Assembly (NCBI GenBank): GCA_002104905.1
Contig: MCFE01000735.1
Span: 1-41,314, forward strand
DNA: 41,314 bases
Reading direction: 5' to 3'
DNA from: Basidiobolus meristosporus CBS 931.73
Lineage: Eukaryota; Fungi; Basidiobolomycota
The translations under genes were made by a program, and so were the position numbers. Positions 28,978 through 41,314 of the stretch are shown here, piece after piece. Under the pieces are notes generated by a model. The model saw only the letters and a program-made list of their open reading frames with translations. It was not told where the DNA came from and did no database searches. The stretch's first letter is position 1. Every line of letters starts with the position of its first letter.

Positions 28978-29281
28978 CAGGGGAGACAGTGATCAGCAGG
29001 TGAAAACTTTATTTCAATTGAAACAAAGAATCTAGAACCACTGTTGTAGCTCTGATATCAGAGTGTGTGGCTAAGGGGAATTTGAAGGTAAGTTAATGAG
29101 GAGAGATGATAGTTCTTCAGTCCTCAAGACACCATTTAGTTGGAAGAGGGTAGCAAGAGAGGTAAGAATGATTAGTGAGCATCATAAATAAGGGGAATAT
29201 GATAAGGATTGATATTCATTATATTGGGAGTGTGCTATTTCAGATATTACTGTCAAAGGGCAGTGAAGTACTTCAGGTAGG
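28978..29281 (-). mobile_element. Old 3'-end relic of the telomeric LINE family, interrupted by a copia insertion
   Basis: Aligns by eye with 36508-36813 (GGGGAGACAG...GGTGAAA.CTTTATTTCA.TTGAAACAAAGAA...TACTTCAGGTAGG), in the same orientation as the distal array. Confidence 0.85.
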
Positions 29282-33402: not shown

Positions 33403-34985
33403 ATAACAGAATACTTTGTGATTCTTATCTATTCAATATTGCTATTAGCAATCATAGTGGTGTCTATACTTAATTCTCTAAATTCTTTTGTGTGATAGCT
33501 TATGGTGCTTGTAATGCCAGTTTGGCTTGCACAATGAGTTGCAGAATTTTTGCAGTAAAATTAGTAGCACTCACAAATAATTCAGCTTGTAATATACCTA
33601 CAAATAGCTATGGACTTGTTGATAAAATGCTGCATAGTAATTTTATTTCTTTTCAGCAGCAAAGCCCATTATATTTGCACTCTCACATGAAACATCATAG
33701 TTGTCTACAGTTGTAATTACTGCACAATCAATCCTGCTCAATGTGTTTTAATATGTTAAGTTTCTTGAAAGAAAATATACAGATACAGTTATATTAACAT
33801 CCAGCCAAGAATACCATCAACCATGATTGATTCTTATTCTCAATATATGCATGCATTATGGTGGTGTAGAGGTACTCCAGGGAGAAGCTACACAACTCAA
33901 GATGTGTGAGATGTCTGTTGGGTTCAATAACCTCTGGGTCTAAACTGCTGCTTTCTTTGTCAATATGTAACTATGGTAAAAGCTCCTGCTTCTCTAGCTT
34001 CCTTGGTGCTCCAAGTGTCTCCAAAGGCCTCTGTGTGTCTTGTGCATAACCCTGAAAAGCTCCTTGATGGCAGGTCTGAGGTGTAACTGTAGAAGGCAGG
34101 TGCAGTGGTCAACTGCTAATCAATAAGGGAGAAGTATTTCTGATAGATGGGATGATTTATTGATAGGGTTTGACTTCCCTTAAATACTTTTCCAGATTGC
34201 CAAGTGATTACTAATGACAAGGTTCTAGAAAATTCCAGGCATCAGAGGAATTCTTGATGACATCACTATGAGCTAAAAATACTTCAAGGAGGTTGTGGAA
34301 GGTTCTAAAAGGCACAGCACATCCAACCAATCAGGGATCAGTAGTCTGAGACCTGTGTAGCATAGAGATACCATACATGGTACTAATATGGTGGGGATGG
34401 TAACACAGACTTAGGTCATGTGTCATGGGTACTGACACAGGTACTTGCCTAATGTGGATACATATACTAATCAGAAAGCTGAGCAACATCTGGGATAACT
34501 AATGCTATCAATTAATTAGGGTAAACATCATATGGGGATAATACAAATAATATGGGCAATATAAGAATGGGATAATACTGATAAGATAAAATATGGATAA
34601 GTGTATCATGATAGCTATATGAATAAACTTGTATGTAGGAGGTATGTTTACCCTACCACAGCATTCAATCAGGTTTCCTATATATATGAGGCAAATACCT
34701 GTATTTTGGTGACAGAGTCCTGGCCTGGCAAGACCTTGGCATGGTGGATGTTGAATACATGATACATGGATAGCTGGGTAGAATATGCTTCCCACCAACT
34801 CTCATGATTTGAGTCCAGCAGGAGGTGCAGTGGTATTCTAGTGTGGTTGTAAGGCTTAGCATGGTAAATGAGCAGTTCAAACAAAAGCACCCCCAGCTCA
34901 CTCCACAAAAACTATTCAAATACAAGGTGTCACTGTTGAATGGCAGCCCAAATATGTTAATTGAGTGACAACATTCTTGGTTACC

Positions 34986-35358
34986 TTAGGGGGAGGAAAG
35001 TCACCAAGTAGTGAAATCCTTATTTACTTATGACAAGTATCTAAAGAAGCCAAGTTAATCTGAAGTTATTCCTAGAAAGCTAGGTCTGAGAGATATCTTC
35101 CTGGTAAGCCAGGTCTGAGAGTTGAGAAGCTGAGTGGTACTATATTTCCTAGTTAGCTAGGTCTGAGAGAGGTTTCCTGGAAAGCCTGGCTTGAGAAGTG
35201 AGAATCTGAATATATCTGAGCTAACTTATACTGGTTTGCGGTAGCTGAATTGTGACCGGAATGGCCAGTAGACTGGGGGAACTGAGATGAATTTCTGGGC
35301 AATCACTGGCAATATTTACTGGGCAAATCTGGCCAATTAGCATTTCAAGGATTTCAGC
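34986..35358 (-). mobile_element. Putative non-autonomous (SINE-like) member of the telomeric array: LINE-type 3' tail with a non-coding repetitive body
   Basis: TTAGGGGGAGGAAAGTCACCAAGTAGTGAAATCCTTATTT...AAAGAAGCCA matches the tail at 35359. The body has no ORF2 homology and contains four copies of a roughly 29-bp motif, TTCCT(A/G)G..AGC(T/C)(A/T)GG(T)CT. Confidence 0.6.
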
Positions 35359-36135
35359 TTAGGGGGGAGGGAAAGTCACCAAGTTGGTGAAATCTTTATT
35401 TGAGTTAAGAACTGATCTAAGTACAAATAAAGAAGCCAATCAAGAGGTCTAGAACCTCTCTAATAAGTAGTCTAATTTATGTTTTGTTTCATCTCTGATG
35501 TTTGTTTCAATAAAGTAAAGATCATCAGGGGTAAATATAAAATTCAAGGGTTTTGGGGGAAGTACAAATTGTAGATGTTTCTGATCAATATAATCCAAGT
35601 CTGGAACACAGCCTGGGATTAGGTGTAGTAGGAAAGGTGTGTGAACTTGTAAGTAGCTCTGCCACATAGATCTTAGATGGTCCTGAGCCAGTAGTCTTGG
35701 CTTCTCAGCTTTTTGAAGTTTTGAAGTAAGCTCTGTTACTACAGCAGAGCCAACCAGGGTGTGCCAGCAAGAAGATTTCAGGGAGGAGTTAGATTTAAGC
35801 CATTGTTTGATGGAGGGGTTGTGTGATTTCTGAAGTTTGACTAGGAAGGAAGCACAGAGATAGACCATTTGGATTTGGCATGGGTAGAACCAAAAGGCTC
35901 CATTAGTTGCATGGATATAGGGAGATACTGGAAGATAAGGTACCAAGGATTTGATACACTGATGGAGAAATTTATCCAGGTGGTGAAGCTCACTGGAGGT
36001 TAGGGGTATAATGTGGAGACCAAATTCAAGTACTGGCAGTACATACTGCTTCAGAAGTATAGGGATCTTTGGAATTGGAGTGTCTGGAGTGACTACTACC
36101 AGAAGCTTTTTGAGAGCCTGTTGGGCAAGATGGGC
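35359..36135 (-). mobile_element. 5'-truncated copy of a divergent subfamily of the telomeric LINE (ORF2 C-terminus open, stop at 35449)
   Basis: LKQYVLPVLEFGL...LDKF...CIKSLVP.LP..PY.HA..GAF...SCW.T..G...EKP.L...L..W..YLQ.HTPF aligns with the C-terminus of ORF2 at 36569-39322. The 3' end is TTAGGGGGG. Confidence 0.88.
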
Positions 36136-36503
36136 TAGGGGGAGACAGTCACCAACAGGTGAAATCTTTATTTCAGTAGAAATAAAGAAGCCAGCGCTAC
36201 TGTTGTAGCTTTGATACAAGAGTGTGTAGCTGAGGGGAATTTGTAGGTAAGTTCATAAAAGTGATGATAGCTCTTCAGTGCTCAAGACACTGTTCAGTGG
36301 GAAGGGGGGTAGCAAGAGAGGTAAGAATGACTTGTGAACAACATTAATGAGGGGAATGTGATAAGGATTGATATTCATCATAAACGGAATGTGCTGCTGC
36401 AGATATTGCTGCCAAAGTGCTGTCAAGTACTTCAGGTAGGCCAGCTTGGGTATTTCTGACTGCAGAATATAGTAAACAAACTTCTTGACTTCAGGATCTC
36501 CAA
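36136..36503 (-). mobile_element. 5'-truncated (about 370 bp) copy closely related to the full-length telomeric LINE
   Basis: Near-identical to 36506-36872. The 3' end TAGGGGGAGACAGTCACC joins the previous element, and the copy ends at ...GGATCTCCAA. Confidence 0.92.
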
Positions 36504-36568
36504 GTTAGGGGGGGAGACAGTCACCAACAGGTGAAATCTTTATTTCAGTTGAAACAAAGAAGCCAGCG

Positions 36569-39337
36569 CTACTGTTGTAGCTTTGATACAAGAGTGTGTA
36601 GCTGAGGGGAGTTTGTAGGTACGTTAATAAGAAGTGATGATAGTTCTTCAGTGCTCAAGACACTGTTCAGTGGGAAGGGGGGTAGCAAGAGAGGTAAGAA
36701 TGACTTGTGAACAACATTAATGAGGGGAATGTGATAAGGATTGATATTCATCATAAAGGGAGTGTGCTGCTGCAGATATTGCTGCCAAAGGTCTGTCAAG
36801 TACTTCAGGTAGGCCAGCTTGGGTTTTTCTGACTGCAGAATAAATTCTGCAAACTTCTTGACTTCAGGATCTCCAAGTATAGTTCTCCAGCAGGAGCCAG
36901 GTGTTGTGTGGTGTGTTCTCTTCCAGGCCTTAATCAGTGGGTTGTTGCAGTGGTGAAGTCTGAGATATAATCTGGTTCTAAGGTAGAGAAGTCTGATCTT
37001 ATAGGGCATAAACCCAAAAGCACCAAGAATAGCATGTCTGTAGGGGCATTCAGGCAAATGAGGCACCAAGGAGGTAATGCACCATACTGCAAACTTGTCA
37101 AGCTTAGTGCAGTCTCTAGAAGTAAGAGAGAGAAGTGGTAAGCCAAATTCCAGTACAGGGAAGACAAACTGCTTGAGTAGAAGAAGGCAGCTGGGAGCTG
37201 AAGTTGTAGGAGGAGTAACAGCCAGTAGCTTGTGGAGTGCCTGTCTTGCCAGGATAATTCTCTTCTTCAGGTGTGCTCCAGAGTCTAGTCCAGTAGGAAG
37301 GAAAGGAAAGCCAAGATATGTAGCAGAAACCTGAGCAGGTAGAGTGGAGTTCTCTAAGGTGATGGGAGAGCCCAAAGGTACTGTCTTTGCAATGGAAAGC
37401 TGGAGATTATTCTTCTGCAGATACTGGTGGATGGTCTGGGAGTCTTGTTGCACATTGGAGGAGGATATTCTGATGTCATCAGCAAAGAGAGTAACCAGGC
37501 AGTCAGCTGAGAGTCTTGGGAAATCATTCAGGAAGATGGCAAACAGTATAGGACCAAGCACAGAGCCTTGAACCACTCCATTAGGAACTGAGAACACAGC
37601 TGATTGCTCACTTGGGTGCAGAATTCTTGCTTGTGGATCCAGAAACAGGGACCTGACAAGGAGGGTGAGAGAGGTACTGGAGAAGCATTGCAACTTGGAC
37701 CAAAGCAGATTTCTGTCAACTGAATCAAAGGCCTTAGTAATATCAAACAGAACTGAGGGATACTTGCACTGGAGAGAGTGATCTTGGCTAAGTATGACTG
37801 CATATTCCAAGGAGAGGCCAGGAACAAAGCCAAACTGTGCAGGATGAAACTTGAGGGAGTCAGAGTAGAGCTCCTGAGCAAGCAGAAGCTCAAACACCTT
37901 TCTGCAGGTGGGCAGCAGAGATATTGGCCTGTAGGAGCTAGGATCCAGGTGCTTTCCTTTACCCTTGTACAGTGGCAGAACATTTGCAAAGGACCATTCC
38001 TCAGGAGTAGAAAGCTGGGCTGAGCATTGCTGAAACAGTGGAAGCAGAAGTGCAGACATGGCCTTGGTACTAGTCTTCAGAAGCTCATAGGAGATTGTGT
38101 CCACACCTGGAGCAGTAGAGTTGGGAAGCCTCTTGAGCACATTATGGATTCTCCTTTGATCAAGTGCAAGTGGGATGGGCAGAGTCTTGAAGTCAGGATG
38201 AAAGCCAGGAGTTGAGTACTGCTTTGTAGAGAAGAAGATGTTAGCCAGCTGTTCTGTTGAAGGTAACTTCCTGGAAGAGGGCCTCATTGCCCTGTAGAGT
38301 CTTGATACTGTTCTTGTTATAGAGTTGGAAGATTGCAGAGGCAAGGAACTCATAATATGATCCCAGAGCTGAGTATGCAGAGTGTGGTGAATTGCCTTGG
38401 AGTGGTGTATTGCTATCAGGAGGAGTTTCTCTGTTTTTGGGTTAGGGAAACTCAGGTAGCTTTGTTGCAGGGCTGAAACAATGGATTCCCATTTTCTTGA
38501 GGTAACAGCAGTAGTCTTGCATGGCAGTGAGAGGGAGGCAGACACCAGAATCAGATGCTTCACAAAGAGCCAGGCATAGTTGAGATCATCTGGCAGAGAA
38601 AGTAGCAAACTGGCAAGCTTCAAGTAGTTCCCAAAGTCTTTCTTCTGATTCTTGGTAGCTTTGTGGGTGAGCACAGTAAGTTTTGGCAGCTTCTTCTTCA
38701 CAACTGGTTGCATAGAAAGGGACCAGGCTGGGTGGTCAGAGGCTCTCAAGGATCCTAGCTCAGCTCCAGAGAATTGCTTAACTTCATCCACAAAGTAGAG
38801 GGCAGCAGCAGAAGGGCAGATCCAGTCAACACATCTTTTCTCAGATTGAGCACCTAGTGCTAGCAGATGGCTTTCTCTCAGGAAGTTCAGTAGGAATGTA
38901 GACCTTGGCTTCATTCTTGCAGTCAGAGTAGTCTTGTTCTCAGGATGGGGAATGTTGAGATCTCCAAGCAAGATAATAGGTGTTGATATAGATTGCTGGT
39001 ATTGCTGAACTTTCTGGCATATAACTTGCACTTCCTGAAGGGCAAGACTTGGAGGCAGATAGCAGAGCACCAGACTGATAGTTGGCAACTGGAGAGCAGC
39101 ACAGTAAGGGGAGTAAAGAGGAACACAGAGCTGAGGAGTATTAATGGTAGAAGAGATGAAGCAGATAGAGGAGGTATTCTTTGTTCTAGGAGTAGAAAAG
39201 CAATATAGATTAGTCAAAAGTATAGAGGGTAGCTGAACATCAATCAAACACAGGAGGGAAAATCTTGAAAGAAGTCTCTCTAGAGTTGGTCTTGATGGCT
39301 GTATGCTGTTGCAGTTAAGCAACAGAACTTCAGGTAG
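36569..39337 (-). CDS. LINE ORF2: AP-endonuclease plus reverse transcriptase (922 codons after the ORF1 stop; no ATG before residue 137 of the track translation)
   Basis: APE motifs LLLNCN, LCYLPP, LLGDLN, RCVDWI and SDH. RT motifs APGVDTI, YRPISLL, QFGF, FDITKAFDSV, GVVQGSVLGPILF, FADD and YLG. No RNase H or C-terminal CCHC was seen. Confidence 0.93.
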   Translation of the reverse strand, partial: LPEVLLLNCNSIQPSRPTLERLLSRFSLLCLIDVQLPSILLTNLYCFSTPRTKNTSSICFISSTINTPQLCVPLYSPYCAALQLPTISLVLCYLPPSLALQEVQVICQKVQQYQQSISTPIILLGDLNIPHPENKTTLTARMKPRSTFLLNFLRESHLLALGAQSEKRCVDWICPSAAALYFVDEVKQFSGAELGSLRASDHPAWSLSMQPVVKKKLPKLTVLTHKATKNQKKDFGNYLKLASLLLSLPDDLNYAWLFVKHLILVSASLSLPCKTTAVTSRKWESIVSALQQSYLSFPNPKTEKLLLIAIHHSKAIHHTLHTQLWDHIMSSLPLQSSNSITRTVSRLYRAMRPSSRKLPSTEQLANIFFSTKQYSTPGFHPDFKTLPIPLALDQRRIHNVLKRLPNSTAPGVDTISYELLKTSTKAMSALLLPLFQQCSAQLSTPEEWSFANVLPLYKGKGKHLDPSSYRPISLLPTCRKVFELLLAQELYSDSLKFHPAQFGFVPGLSLEYAVILSQDHSLQCKYPSVLFDITKAFDSVDRNLLWSKLQCFSSTSLTLLVRSLFLDPQARILHPSEQSAVFSVPNGVVQGSVLGPILFAIFLNDFPRLSADCLVTLFADDIRISSSNVQQDSQTIHQYLQKNNLQLSIAKTVPLGSPITLENSTLPAQVSATYLGFPFLPTGLDSGAHLKKRIILARQALHKLLAVTPPTTSAPSCLLLLKQFVFPVLEFGLPLLSLTSRDCTKLDKFAVWCITSLVPHLPECPYRHAILGAFGFMPYKIRLLYLRTRLYLRLHHCNNPLIKAWKRTHHTTPGSCWRTILGDPEVKKFAEFILQSEKPKLAYLKYLTDLWQQYLQQHTPFMMNINPYHIPLINVVHKSFLPLLLPPFPLNSVLSTEELSSLLINVPTNSPQLHTLVSKLQQ

Positions 39338-40846
39338 TCAGGCAGAGGTTGTAGCTTCTTCAGAGGCAGCATTGACAATGTGACCTGCAGAGTCCCAGAG
39401 CTCTTCAAATGGTGCATCACTTAAGTCAGCAAGGAGGGAAATGGCATGGTTCTTGAGGAAGTATGCCACATCATAGGAGGGGGCTTGTCTCTTGATGGCA
39501 GCAAAGAAAGACAGAATGGCAACATGGGCTGGAGGCTTGTTGAACAGTAGAGAGTCAGAGGATTCAGATTCTTCAGGCACTATCTTGAAGTCAGTTTTCA
39601 GCCAGTTAAGGTTCTTCTCCACAAAGGCAACAAATGGGTCAGCAATGTTTTGGTCTAGGATAACCTCCAGAATCTTCCCTTTTCTCCAGGCCAGGTTGAC
39701 AATTCTTGAGTGCTGAATATTGCATGCCTTGAGTGCTTTCCTGATGTTGGAAATGGGAGTCCAGGGAACTTGCTTCAAGTACACCACAGTCCAGGTAGAA
39801 GCTGGTGGTAGGTTTGCTGGGGGCTTGTAAGTCCTTCTGTGTGGCAATGGAGCTGCAGTAGTCAGATTGGAGTCCACATTCTCAGTAGAGGGTTTTCTTG
39901 ATGTGTCTTGCTGAATGGTACTGGAGCTGGATGTGTTGATAATTCTTGCTAGAACCTTGCCTGCATAAGTCTGAGGTATAGCTGAGGTGACTGTAGAGGT
40001 GGTGGCAGCTGGTGCAGGTGGAGAGGCAGAAACTGAAGCAGGAACTGAGGTCACCTGGGAGAAGGCAGTAGAAGCAGGTTTTCTGGGAGGAACAGAGTTC
40101 ACTATCCAGTTGTTCTGTAAAACACTGGAGTAGCTTTTCTGTGGAACAGGATCTTGCTCTTGAACAGGAACAGAAGCAGCAGGCTGGGGCTGAGCAGTAG
40201 TGGTAAGGCAGTGGCACTCCAAGGAAGCTTTTTGCAAGGCATCTCTGGCAGTTTTCAGGGCAGTATTGGCTTCATTCTTAAGCTTCTTGCATTGGGCATC
40301 CAGTCTCTTGTTTTCAATAGTCAGGGCAGTATTGGCAGCCTCTAAATCAGCAATTCTCTTCTCAATTGCAAGGAATCTCTGAAGAAATGCATCAGTAGAA
40401 GTGCTGGCATCTGGGAGCGCAGTGGCAGGAATAGAGTCCATTGACAGTGGGCTTCTTGGAGGCAAGGAAAGTGGACTGGCAGATTCAGGCACAAAAGGAG
40501 ATATCCTGGCAGGAGGAGAAGGAGTATCCAAGGCAGTAACAGAGGCAATTCTTGTTGGTGAAGCAGCAGCAGGGGAGGCAAGCCTGTTCAGAAACTGGGC
40601 AGGAGAGAGTGCTTGAGGAGAGGGAGTCTTCAGCTTGCCAAGCATGTCTTCCATCAGAGTGATACCAATATTCCTGGTGCATTTGCAGAGAAAAGTAAGC
40701 TTCCTGAGTCTGCCAGCTCTTCCATTCCTTCTGATAGTTCCTTTGTTTCCACAGTTGGGGCAAGAAATCTTCTTGATAGACTTGTCAAAGCAATCAAGAA
40801 CCTTCCTTTCAGGTGTAGTGGGCTCCTGTTGAGGTTTTGGTGGCAT
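39338..40846 (-). CDS. LINE ORF1 (502 aa from ATG 40846): N-terminal Cys4 zinc-ribbon-like motif, coiled coil, Pro/Ser/Thr linkers and a C-terminal alpha/beta domain
   Basis: CPNCGNKGTIRRNG...FLCKC; heptad-rich FLQRFLAIEKRIADLEAANTALTIENKRL; WTVVYLKQVPWTPISNIRKAL. It lies directly upstream of ORF2. Confidence 0.85.
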   Translation of the reverse strand: MPPKPQQEPTTPERKVLDCFDKSIKKISCPNCGNKGTIRRNGRAGRLRKLTFLCKCTRNIGITLMEDMLGKLKTPSPQALSPAQFLNRLASPAAASPTRIASVTALDTPSPPARISPFVPESASPLSLPPRSPLSMDSIPATALPDASTSTDAFLQRFLAIEKRIADLEAANTALTIENKRLDAQCKKLKNEANTALKTARDALQKASLECHCLTTTAQPQPAASVPVQEQDPVPQKSYSSVLQNNWIVNSVPPRKPASTAFSQVTSVPASVSASPPAPAATTSTVTSAIPQTYAGKVLARIINTSSSSTIQQDTSRKPSTENVDSNLTTAAPLPHRRTYKPPANLPPASTWTVVYLKQVPWTPISNIRKALKACNIQHSRIVNLAWRKGKILEVILDQNIADPFVAFVEKNLNWLKTDFKIVPEESESSDSLLFNKPPAHVAILSFFAAIKRQAPSYDVAYFLKNHAISLLADLSDAPFEELWDSAGHIVNAASEEATTSA

Positions 40847-40915
40847 ATCCAGAGTTTCAGCTTCAAATTTCAATTTTTGAGATTTTTGGGTGATTTTTGA
40901 TGGGCGGGATCAAAA

Positions 40916-40929
40916 TTAGGGTTAGGGTT
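40916..40929 (+). repeat. Internal telomeric tract TTAGGGTTAGGGTT in the LINE 5' region
   Basis: Read directly; about 140 bp proximal to the terminal array. Confidence 0.9.
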
Positions 40930-41070
40930 GCGCGCTGTGACTGCTTTTTACGATCGCAAGGTCAGAACCTAGGAAAAAATAAAAATAGTTAGTAAAGGTG
41001 ATTTAATGGATGGATGGATGGATTCGGAGTCAGATTCAATCAAAAAATCAAATCGTTGACTAATTTAAGA

Positions 41071-41314
41071 GGTTAGGGTTAGGGTTAGGGTTAGGGTTAG
41101 GGTTAGGGTTAGGTTAGGGTTAGGGTTAGGGTTAGGGTTAGGGTTAGGGTTAGGGTTAGGGTTAGGGTTAGGGTTAGGGTTAGGGTTAGGGTTAGGGTTA
41201 GGGTTAGGGTTAGGGTTAGGGTTAGGGTTAGGGTTAGGGTTAGGGTTAGGGTTAGGGTTAGGGTTAGGGTTAGGGTTAGGGTTAGGGTTAGGGTTAGGGT
41301 TAGGGTTAGGTTAG
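41071..41314 (+). repeat. Telomere, (TTAGGG)n, about 40 units, G-strand running towards the window end
   Basis: Direct repeat array to the last base, with one TTAGG variant near 41109-41113. Confidence 0.99.

What the first reader, a model, noticed from the sequence alone, without database searches (positions are those of the whole stretch)
39314..39346. ORF1 and ORF2 are in frame and separated only by TGA-CTA, a leaky stop context
Seen (minus strand): ...ACC TCT GCC TGA CTA CCT GAA GTT CTG TTG CTT AAC TGC AAC. The ORF1 stop (39338-39340) is followed directly, in frame, by LPEVLLLNCN, the first beta-strand and Asn of the AP-endonuclease. The first ORF2 ATG is about 140 codons later, after the GDLN motif, so ATG initiation would lose most of the endonuclease. 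Known: UGA-CUA promotes readthrough in alphaviruses, in some animal genes, and in fungal genes that make peroxisomal isoforms (for example PGK in Ustilago maydis). Inference: the EN-RT is made as an ORF1-ORF2 fusion of about 1425 aa by programmed readthrough, a gag-pol-like strategy unusual for LINEs. Caveat: in this CpG-purged element, TGA could instead be a CGA-to-TGA lesion in a single-ORF element. Initiation at the nearby CTG/TTG is also possible.
Basis: partly seen in the sequence, partly recalled or inferred. Interest (0 to 1): 0.85.

Follow-up and report, generated by a model that had tools for sequence, protein, structure and literature searches.

The report
Leaky stop joins LINE genes
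A jumping gene at the tip of a Basidiobolus (early-diverging fungus) chromosome keeps its cutting-and-copying enzyme directly behind a single UGA stop in a known leaky context; nine diverged relatives keep the same arrangement, so the enzyme is most likely made fused to the first protein when ribosomes read through the stop.

Summary
On the minus strand, ORF1 (502 aa) ends in TGA (39340-39338). CTA follows, then ORF2 (922 aa, endonuclease plus reverse transcriptase) in the same frame with no spacer.

The TGA is not a private lesion:
- Nine lineages from other assemblies (38-72% aa identity around the junction, synonymous sites near saturation) all have ORF1-TGA-CTN-ORF2 in frame.
- TGACT is the only run of invariant columns in a 120-column alignment.
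- The ORF2 ends that could be read use TAG or TAA, never TGA.
- The first ORF2 Met wanders from codon 2 to codon 142, yet the segment before it is under purifying selection.
- That segment models as the first strands of an AP-endonuclease fold; the best structural match is the TRAS1 endonuclease.

UGA followed by CU is the minimal motif shown experimentally to drive readthrough in Ustilago maydis and HeLa cells (PMC4207609).

A covarying hairpin 12 nt downstream occurs in only one subclade. I found no intron, no SECIS and no single-ORF relative.

Best reading: programmed UGA readthrough makes a 1425-aa ORF1-ORF2 fusion (about 0.68). The main rival is AUG-independent reinitiation. No RNA or protein data were available.

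The scan reached the same reading earlier on other pieces of this genome.

The parts
40847..41072 (-). 5' UTR of the element. It abuts the (CCCTAA)n telomere tract and holds an internal CCCTAACCCTAA at 40927-40916.
   Evidence: The 5' ends of L002 and L014 begin with the same CCTCTT... string.
39341..40846 (-). ORF1, 502 aa. It has an N-terminal Cys4 motif, a coiled coil, a conserved C-terminal domain, and a variable tail of 12-17 aa. The tail ends in Ser followed by Ala in 7 of 9 lineages (Ile or Asn in the other two; L001 has Thr-Ala).
   Evidence: dN/dS is 0.12-0.28 between lineages.
39338..39340 (-). The in-frame TGA that separates ORF1 from ORF2. It is the proposed readthrough codon.
   Evidence: It is TGA in all nine lineages and the only in-frame stop in 1425 codons.
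39335..39337 (-). The CTA codon after the stop. Its C and T (positions +4 and +5) are invariant in the family; the third base varies (A, C or T).
   Evidence: Alignment A4, invariant columns 31-35. The UGA-CU core motif is described in PMC4207609.
39303..39328 (-). A hairpin that begins 9 nt after the stop as a 10-pair stem; its 7-bp core (CUGUUGC / GCAACAG, 6-nt loop) begins 12 nt after the stop. It may be an accessory stimulator and occurs in one subclade only.
   Evidence: RNAalifold predicts it as the only consensus structure. In seven sequences 81% of cells pair and 4 of 10 pairs show compensatory changes. It is absent in L008, L011 and L013, and pairing drops to 72% with all ten sequences.
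38663..39337 (-). AP-type endonuclease domain (ORF2 residues about 1-225). It carries N8, D33, GDLN 125-128 and SDH 200-202.
   Evidence: AF2 model with pLDDT 76.3 and pTM 0.75. Foldseek top hit is 1wdu, the TRAS1 endonuclease, at E 5.7e-10, followed by APE1 and L1 EN.
37304..37942 (-). Reverse transcriptase domain (ORF2 residues 466-678).
   Evidence: Pfam RVT_1, E 2.6e-25.
36572..39337 (-). ORF2, 922 aa. Its first Met is at codon 142.
36569..36571 (-). ORF2 terminator, TAG. It contrasts with the TGA at the junction.
   Evidence: ORF2 ends are TAG in the window copy, L001, L003, L006 and L008, and TAA in L002.
36505..36568 (-). 3' UTR. It holds AATAAA, a short hairpin and a C-run followed by TAA, and has no poly(A).
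   Evidence: The same module sits at the 3' ends of L002-L005, L007, L009 and L010.

Best explanation
This is an intact APE-type LINE at a chromosome end whose two genes form one reading frame interrupted by a single UGA in the context UGA-CU(A). Most ribosomes terminate there and make ORF1p, the nucleic-acid-binding 'gag-like' protein. A minority decode the UGA with a near-cognate tRNA and continue, making a 1425-aa ORF1-endonuclease-RT fusion. That sets a fixed high ORF1p to enzyme ratio, as gag-pol readthrough does in gammaretroviruses. Shown here: the anatomy, its conservation, the selection on the downstream segment, and the match to a tested motif. Inferred: that readthrough occurs, how efficient it is, and that the fusion is the active enzyme.
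For: (1) All nine lineages have ORF1-TGA-CTN-ORF2 in the same frame with no spacer, at 38-72% aa identity around the junction and pS 0.57-0.87. (2) TGACT is the only run of invariant columns in 120 aligned columns. As a neutral control, 2 of 32 invariant two-fold amino-acid columns and 0 of 33 four-fold columns keep one codon in all nine lineages, and 5 of 17 invariant Leu columns are all CTN; together that is roughly 0.02 for an unconstrained stop plus Leu. (3) Every ORF2 end that could be read is TAG or TAA, never TGA. (4) No start is conserved: the first ORF2 Met falls at codon 142, 2, 139, 103, 71, 5, 116, 59 or 59, and L008 has no near-cognate start in its first eight codons. (5) The segment before the first ATG is under purifying selection, dN/dS 0.12-0.40 where it could be computed. 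It holds strand 1 and the catalytic N, D and GDLN of a confirmed AP-endonuclease fold. (6) In U. maydis, UGA plus CU is sufficient for efficient readthrough. It depends on UGA and on the first two downstream bases, and it also works in HeLa cells (PMC4207609). These are exactly the invariant letters here. (7) A 15-nt indel in the variable ORF1 tail of L008 preserves the frame. (8) No protein of about 1425 aa appeared among the close relatives.
Against: There is no expression, ribosome or peptide evidence, and no RNA run was on record. LINEs are known to translate ORF2 without readthrough: SART1 by UAAUG coupling and human L1 by AUG-independent reinitiation (PMC5972666; PMC5009743). The invariant C and U could partly reflect a conserved Leu, since 77% of Leu codons in the family are CTN. 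The downstream hairpin is not universal. The conservation statistic is modest and the nine lineages are not fully independent. ORF1-ORF2 fusion proteins are not the usual LINE design.
Confidence: 0.68

Rival explanations
1. ORF2 is made as a separate protein. Ribosomes terminate at the UGA and reinitiate, or initiate internally, at a non-AUG codon within the next few codons, as proposed for human L1 and shown with UAAUG for SART1. The UGA and its context are kept because they favour ribosome retention.
For: LINE precedents exist. CTG or TTG lies 4-5 codons after the stop in the window copy, L002 and L003, and an ATG lies at codon 2 in L001 and codon 5 in L009. A downstream hairpin is present in one subclade, and SART1 coupling also needs downstream structure.
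Against: No start or near-cognate codon is conserved, and L008 has none in its first eight codons. Reinitiation does not require a shared frame, a zero spacer or UGA specifically, yet all three are invariant in nine lineages. The invariant letters match a tested readthrough motif, not a stop-start overlap.
Confidence: 0.24
2. The TGA is a decay lesion, for example CGA to TGA in a CpG-depleted element, in a family that otherwise has a single ORF; this copy would be dead.
For: CpG observed/expected in the element is 0.04. One relative, L009, does carry a premature TAG inside ORF2.
Against: The same TGA sits at the same position in nine lineages with saturated synonymous divergence. The window copy has no CGN codon among 59 Arg codons and no other in-frame stop. 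No fused relative turned up. Contigs of the source sample listed no variant at 39338-39340, although that list was truncated.
Confidence: 0.01
3. The stop is bypassed by another route: UGA decoded as selenocysteine, or a small intron or RNA edit that removes the stop from some transcripts.
For: [quoted passage not shown] GCCTGACT contains a CTRAC-like branch-point string.
Against: Rfam gave no SECIS hit across 34900-41100 even at E up to 1, and the 3' UTR is only 64 nt. The window copy has no consensus-like GT donor within 500 nt upstream, and no conserved in-frame donor/acceptor pair exists in six lineages.
Confidence: 0.03

Closest known systems
[quoted passage not shown] 2014, PMC4207609)
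   Same: The core signal is the same: UGA followed by C and U, with a free or A-preferring third base. It works in a fungus and needs no long downstream element.
   Different: There it appends a peroxisomal targeting signal of a few residues to a host enzyme. Here it would append a 922-aa endonuclease-RT to a retrotransposon's ORF1 protein. It has not been tested here.
Gag-pol readthrough of gammaretroviruses (MLV) and of some LTR retrotransposons (my own knowledge, not checked here)
   Same: A structural protein and the polymerase share one frame separated by one stop. The logic is a fixed low ratio of fusion to structural protein.
   Different: MLV uses UAG plus a pseudoknot 8 nt downstream and cleaves the fusion with a protease. 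This is a non-LTR element with UGA-CU, a hairpin at most and only in one subclade, and no protease.
SART1 and TRAS1, telomere-repeat-specific LINEs of Bombyx mori
   Same: Both are APE-type LINEs tied to telomeres. The TRAS1 endonuclease (1wdu) is the best structural match to this endonuclease domain. Both families have two ORFs.
   Different: SART1 makes ORF2 by UAAUG stop-start coupling with a downstream structure. Here no overlapping AUG exists and the ORFs share a frame. Sequence identity to the TRAS1 endonuclease is only 16%.
Human L1, whose ORF2 is translated by unconventional AUG-independent reinitiation
   Same: Both are bicistronic LINE RNAs in which an ORF2 AUG is dispensable or lacking.
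   Different: L1 has a 63-nt spacer between the ORFs. This family has no spacer, a shared frame and an invariant UGA-CU.
HeT-A and TART telomere retrotransposons of Drosophila
   Same: Both form head-to-tail stacks at chromosome ends with the 5' ends facing the tip.
   Different: TART pol lies in the +1 frame after a 37-nt spacer, and how it is expressed is unknown. This fungus keeps TTAGGG caps.

Membership tests
Programmed stop-codon readthrough, short UGA-CU(A) class | The stop codon is UGA. | tested here: met
   TGA in 9 of 9 lineages.
Programmed stop-codon readthrough, short UGA-CU(A) class | C at +4 and U at +5. | tested here: met
   Invariant columns 34-35 of A4. The +6 base is A in 5 lineages, C in 2 and T in 2.
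Programmed stop-codon readthrough, short UGA-CU(A) class | The in-frame downstream sequence is coding, under purifying selection, and has no start of its own. | tested here: met
   dN/dS 0.12-0.40 before the first ATG. The first Met position is not conserved. The endonuclease fold starts at residue 3.
Programmed stop-codon readthrough, short UGA-CU(A) class | A readthrough product can be measured. | not testable with these tools
   No RNA, ribosome or proteome data were available; no RNA run was on record.
APE-type non-LTR retrotransposon (LINE) | An AP-endonuclease domain lies N-terminal to a reverse transcriptase in ORF2. | tested here: met
   Foldseek matches to TRAS1 EN, APE1 and L1 EN at E about 1e-9. 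RVT_1 at E 2.6e-25.
APE-type non-LTR retrotransposon (LINE) | The genome holds 5'-truncated copies, and the element has no LTRs. | tested here: met
   Truncated copies lie at 36138-36505, about 35359-36137 and 28980-29281. Contig depth rises about 12-fold from the 5' to the 3' end.
Termination-reinitiation by stop-start overlap (SART1, calicivirus and influenza B type) | An AUG overlaps or abuts the stop (UAAUG or AUGA). | tested here: not met
   No lineage has an overlapping AUG. Only L001 (codon 2) and L009 (codon 5) have a nearby ATG.
Termination-reinitiation by stop-start overlap (SART1, calicivirus and influenza B type) | A conserved flanking RNA structure or rRNA-complementary motif is present. 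| tested here: inconclusive
   The hairpin is present in one subclade only. Upstream motifs were not examined.
Selenocysteine recoding | A SECIS element lies in the 3' UTR. | tested here: not met
   No Rfam hit at E up to 1. The 3' UTR is 64 nt.
Selenocysteine recoding | The host has the selenocysteine machinery. | not tested
   [quoted passage not shown] The primary paper was not held.
Retroviral UAG-pseudoknot gag-pol readthrough (MLV type) | A UAG is followed by an 8-nt spacer and a pseudoknot. | tested here: not met
   The stop is UGA. At most a simple hairpin follows, after 9-12 nt, and it is not universal.

The most novel reading that the evidence does not exclude
Readthrough is the family's obligate way of making its enzyme, and it ties the endonuclease-RT physically to ORF1p (Cys4 motif plus coiled coil). 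The fusion co-assembles with free ORF1p multimers on its own RNA and is carried to chromosome ends. A recoding event would then set both the dose and the targeting of a telomere-extending LINE in a fungus that also has telomerase. Because leakiness in the UGA-C context has been proposed to respond to oxygen (PMC4207609), end-healing by the element could respond to the cell's state.
Probability: 0.15. Interest if true: 0.85.

Novelty: new variant of a known kind. Interest (0 to 1): 0.62.

Why it matters
How LINEs translate ORF2 is a long-standing open question. Human L1 uses an undefined AUG-independent route, and for TART the route is unknown. A LINE family with a clean, conserved, minimal readthrough signal in a culturable fungus would be the first gag-pol-style LINE that a simple reporter could test directly. 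It would also extend the UGA-CU motif from short host-protein extensions to the expression of a whole polymerase. It would give a handle on the ORF1p to ORF2p ratio in an element that builds chromosome ends.

Tried and rejected
- **Lesion hypothesis:** rejected by nine-lineage conservation and the absence of CGN codons.
- **Intron spanning the stop:** the window copy has no consensus-like donor within 500 nt, and six lineages share no conserved in-frame donor/acceptor pair.
- **Selenocysteine:** no SECIS.
- **2A-type skipping:** no NPGP-like motif in the ORF1 tail.
- **Universal downstream stimulatory hairpin:** rejected. It covaries in the window/L001/L002/L003 subclade, is weak in L009, is absent in L008, L011 and L013, and L012 has a different structure.
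- **Extra synonymous constraint just after the stop:** none, 0.38-0.43 against a background of 0.44.
- **PDB sequence search with a profile of the endonuclease region:** 0 hits. The fold had to be shown by modelling.
- **Reads:** no RNA run was found. Contigs of the source sample listed no variant at the stop, but 45 variant rows were not shown, so this is weak. Runs of the second strain barely cover the junction.
- **Exhaustive profile search for more distant members:** beyond the family's own fragments and gene models, it returned only generic RTs.
- **Literature:** five searches for a LINE readthrough precedent returned none. The Mariotti 2019 selenocysteine paper is not held.
- **ORF1-only element in this window as a natural control:** none present.
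Full report
**Observation**

On the minus strand the window reads ...ACC TCT GCC TGA CTA CCT GAA GTT CTG TTG CTT AAC TGC AAC..., with the stop at 39340-39338.
- Translating 36569-40999 in that frame gives one open frame interrupted once.
- ORF1 runs from the ATG at 40846 to 39341 (502 aa). ORF2 runs from 39337 to 36572 (922 aa) and ends in TAG.
- The junction TGA is the only in-frame stop in 1425 codons.
- Pfam finds RVT_1 (E 2.6e-25) and a weak Exo_endo_phos_2 match in ORF2. In ORF1 it finds only a coiled-coil-like match.
- The first ORF2 Met is codon 142, after the invariant G125-D126-x-N128 motif.

**Does the endonuclease begin at the stop?**

A profile of the first 260 residues found nothing in the PDB by sequence, so I modelled it.
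- AlphaFold2 with the six-sequence alignment gave pLDDT 76.3 and pTM 0.75. Strand 1 is at residues 3-12, with pLDDT 88 over the first 20 residues.
- Foldseek against the PDB returned the TRAS1 endonuclease (1wdu, E 5.7e-10) first, then APE1, ExoA and the L1 endonuclease.
- N8, D33, GDLN and S200-D201-H202 are invariant in the six lineages aligned.

Initiation at the first ATG would therefore remove strand 1 and three catalytic positions.

**Context**

The window ends in (TTAGGG)n from about 41070.
- The element's 5' end faces the telomere tract.
- Its 3' end has AATAAA, a short hairpin and a C-run followed by TAA instead of poly(A). It is followed head-to-tail by two 5'-truncated copies.
- Earlier scan notes name the genome as Basidiobolus meristosporus. 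An NCBI contig of B. ranarum encodes a 55%-identical ORF1, which is consistent with that.

**Relatives**

A word-indexed search with ORF2 found five close proteins (48-80% identity). A search with ORF1 found four more distant ones (35-55%), one of them on the B. ranarum contig. All the others sit on unnamed ENA or Logan contigs. I fetched the contigs.
- They give eight lineages besides the window copy: L001, L002, L003 (with L004-L007), L008, L009, L011, L012 and L013.
- Amino-acid identity over the last 250 ORF1 and first 255 ORF2 codons is 38-72%.
- Pairwise pS is 0.57-0.87, close to saturation.
- Several contigs carry the same 3' module and CCCTAA repeats, and L003 is itself a stack of elements, so at least some contigs are genomic DNA of the same kind of element.

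**The junction in the relatives**

Every lineage has ORF1, then TGA, then CTN, then ORF2, in the same frame with no spacer. The codons on either side of the stop are:

| Lineage | Codons before the stop | Codon after the stop |
|---|---|---|
| window | TCT GCC | CTA |
| L001 | ACT GCC | CTA |
| L002 | TCT GCC | CTC |
| L003 | TCT GCC | CTC |
| L008 | TCA GCA | CTA |
| L009 | TCT GCC | CTT |
| L011 | TCT ATC | CTA |
| L012 | TCC AAC | CTA |
| L013 | TCT GCT | CTT |

- In a gap-free alignment of 120 columns, TGACT is the only run of invariant columns.
- For a matched neutral expectation I took columns where all nine lineages share an amino acid. Only 2 of 32 two-fold-degenerate columns and 0 of 33 four-fold columns keep one codon in all nine.
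- Of 17 invariant Leu columns, 5 are CTN throughout.
- A stop free to drift to TAA by one transition, followed by a free Leu codon, would look like this with a probability of roughly 0.02. This is a rough figure, because the lineages share ancestry.
- The ORF2 terminators that could be read are TAG (window copy, L001, L003, L006, L008) and TAA (L002), never TGA.
- The ORF1 tail before the stop varies in sequence and has a 15-nt indel in L008 that keeps the frame.
- No protein of about 1425 aa appeared among the close hits, whose length range reached 1613 aa, or among the family members in the exhaustive profile search.

**Start codons**

The first ORF2 Met lies at codon 142, 2, 139, 103, 71, 5, 116, 59 and 59 in the nine lineages.
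- Near-cognate CTG or TTG codons lie 4-5 codons after the stop in some lineages.
- L008 (CTA CAT ACC TTT CTC CTA CTC AAC) has none.
- The segment between the stop and the window's first ATG has dN/dS of 0.12-0.40 where dS could be computed. ORF1 is similar at 0.12-0.28, and the rest of ORF2 at 0.08-0.20.

**Match to a tested signal**

Stiebler et al. (PMC4207609) showed that in Ustilago maydis the three nucleotides CUA after UGA suffice for efficient readthrough.
- UAG or UAA reduces it.
- The first two downstream nucleotides mainly set the efficiency.
- The same motif works in HeLa cells, where A at the third position helps further.

The invariant letters of this family are exactly UGA, C and U, and the third letter is free.

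**Downstream structure**

RNAalifold on seven sequences predicts one consensus element. It is a stem at alignment columns 42-52 and 59-69, which corresponds to about 39328-39303 in the window for the 10 pairs counted below, with a core CUGUUGC/GCAACAG and a 6-nt loop.
- For 10 named pairs, 81% of cells pair and 4 pairs show compensatory changes at synonymous sites.
- No shuffle of 500 reached the observed covariation score, and slid registers pair at most 56%.
- The stem is weak in L009 and absent in L008, L011 and L013. L012 folds differently.
- With all ten sequences, pairing drops to 72%.

I read the hairpin as a possible accessory of one subclade, not part of the conserved signal. This fits a motif that needs no structure. 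Synonymous conservation right after the stop is at background level.

**Other routes excluded or weakened**

- *Lesion.* CpG observed/expected is 0.04, but all 59 Arg codons are AGA or AGG and there is no other in-frame stop. With the conservation above, this removes the CGA-to-TGA idea.
- *Splicing.* No consensus-like donor lies within 500 nt upstream in the window copy, and no conserved in-frame donor/acceptor pair exists.
- *Selenocysteine.* No SECIS at E up to 1, and the 3' UTR is 64 nt. Reviews place most selenoprotein-using fungi in Harpellales. I could not read the primary paper.
- *Reads.* Contigs of the source sample cover the junction and list no variant at 39338-39340. The table omitted 45 rows, and no RNA run was available.

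**What remains open**

Termination followed by AUG-independent reinitiation, as proposed for human L1 and, with UAAUG, shown for SART1, cannot be excluded by sequence alone.
- Against it stand the shared frame, the zero spacer, the UGA-specific conservation and the lack of any conserved start.
- I put readthrough at about 0.68, separate initiation at about 0.24, and everything else at a few percent.

**Novelty**

Five full-text searches found no report of a LINE that expresses ORF2 by stop-codon readthrough, and none on Basidiobolus telomeric elements. From memory only, in-frame stops between ORF1 and ORF2 were noted in plant L1-type LINEs such as Ta11, and readthrough is classical for MLV gag-pol. 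So this is a new variant of a known kind.

The scan reached the same reading earlier on other pieces of this genome (s1-222134, s1-231405 and several first-reader notes). I tested the claim independently here.

Noticed in passing
window 41070-41314: The window ends in about 40 units of TTAGGG. The LINE's 5' end abuts them, so the element is the terminal unit of a chromosome end and is capped by ordinary telomere repeats.
   Followed up: partly
window 36138-36505, about 35359-36137, and 28980-29281: A head-to-tail stack lies behind the full-length copy. First comes a 368-nt 3' fragment of the same lineage (95% identical). Next is a 5'-truncated copy of a different lineage (42% aa identity to ORF2 residues 696-906). 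Each ends in a C-run followed by TA(A). A further 3'-end fragment lies about 7 kb further in. Contig joints in the source run carry GGGTTA-type fillers between units.
   Followed up: partly
window 38438-38449 (minus strand); wider peak about 38414-38473: Synonymous codon identity among the five lineages that reach this region (L009's ORF2 ends earlier) peaks at 0.94 against a background of 0.44. The peak centres on an invariant TTC CCT AAC CCA (FPNP), which contains CCCTAACCC, 1.5 units of the telomere C-strand. It could be an internal telomere seed or an RNA element inside ORF2. It is unexplained.
   Followed up: partly
window 40916-40927 (minus strand): The 5' UTR contains an internal CCCTAACCCTAA. 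B. ranarum contig L014 has the same string at 147-158.
   Followed up: no
window 36505-41069: CpG depletion is extreme (observed/expected 0.04, against 0.86 in the gene-rich part of the window) in an element with fully intact ORFs. All 59 Arg codons are AGR, and the coding strand is C-rich and G-poor (1234 C against 761 G). This looks like adaptation to, or the filtered outcome of, CpG-directed mutation rather than decay.
   Followed up: partly
L009:2217-2219: The closest relative (80% ORF2 identity, ENA contig) has a premature TAG after ORF2 codon 255, so that copy is probably dead. It still keeps TGA-CTT at the junction.
   Followed up: no
window 36500-41000: Summed contig depth in the source sample rises about 12-fold from the 5' end to the 3' end of the element. 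That is the signature of many 5'-truncated copies in the genome.
   Followed up: no
ORF2 residues 1-225 (window 38663-39337): The best structural match of the endonuclease model is the endonuclease of TRAS1, the telomere-repeat-specific LINE of Bombyx. The nearest non-family sequence hits of ORF2 include aphid and other insect elements, at roughly 22-39% identity over the aligned part. The clade placement of this fungal family was not resolved.
   Followed up: no
window 35481-35543 (+): A sub-threshold Rfam hit to mir-35_2 (27.5 bits against a gathering score of 41), most likely chance.
   Followed up: no
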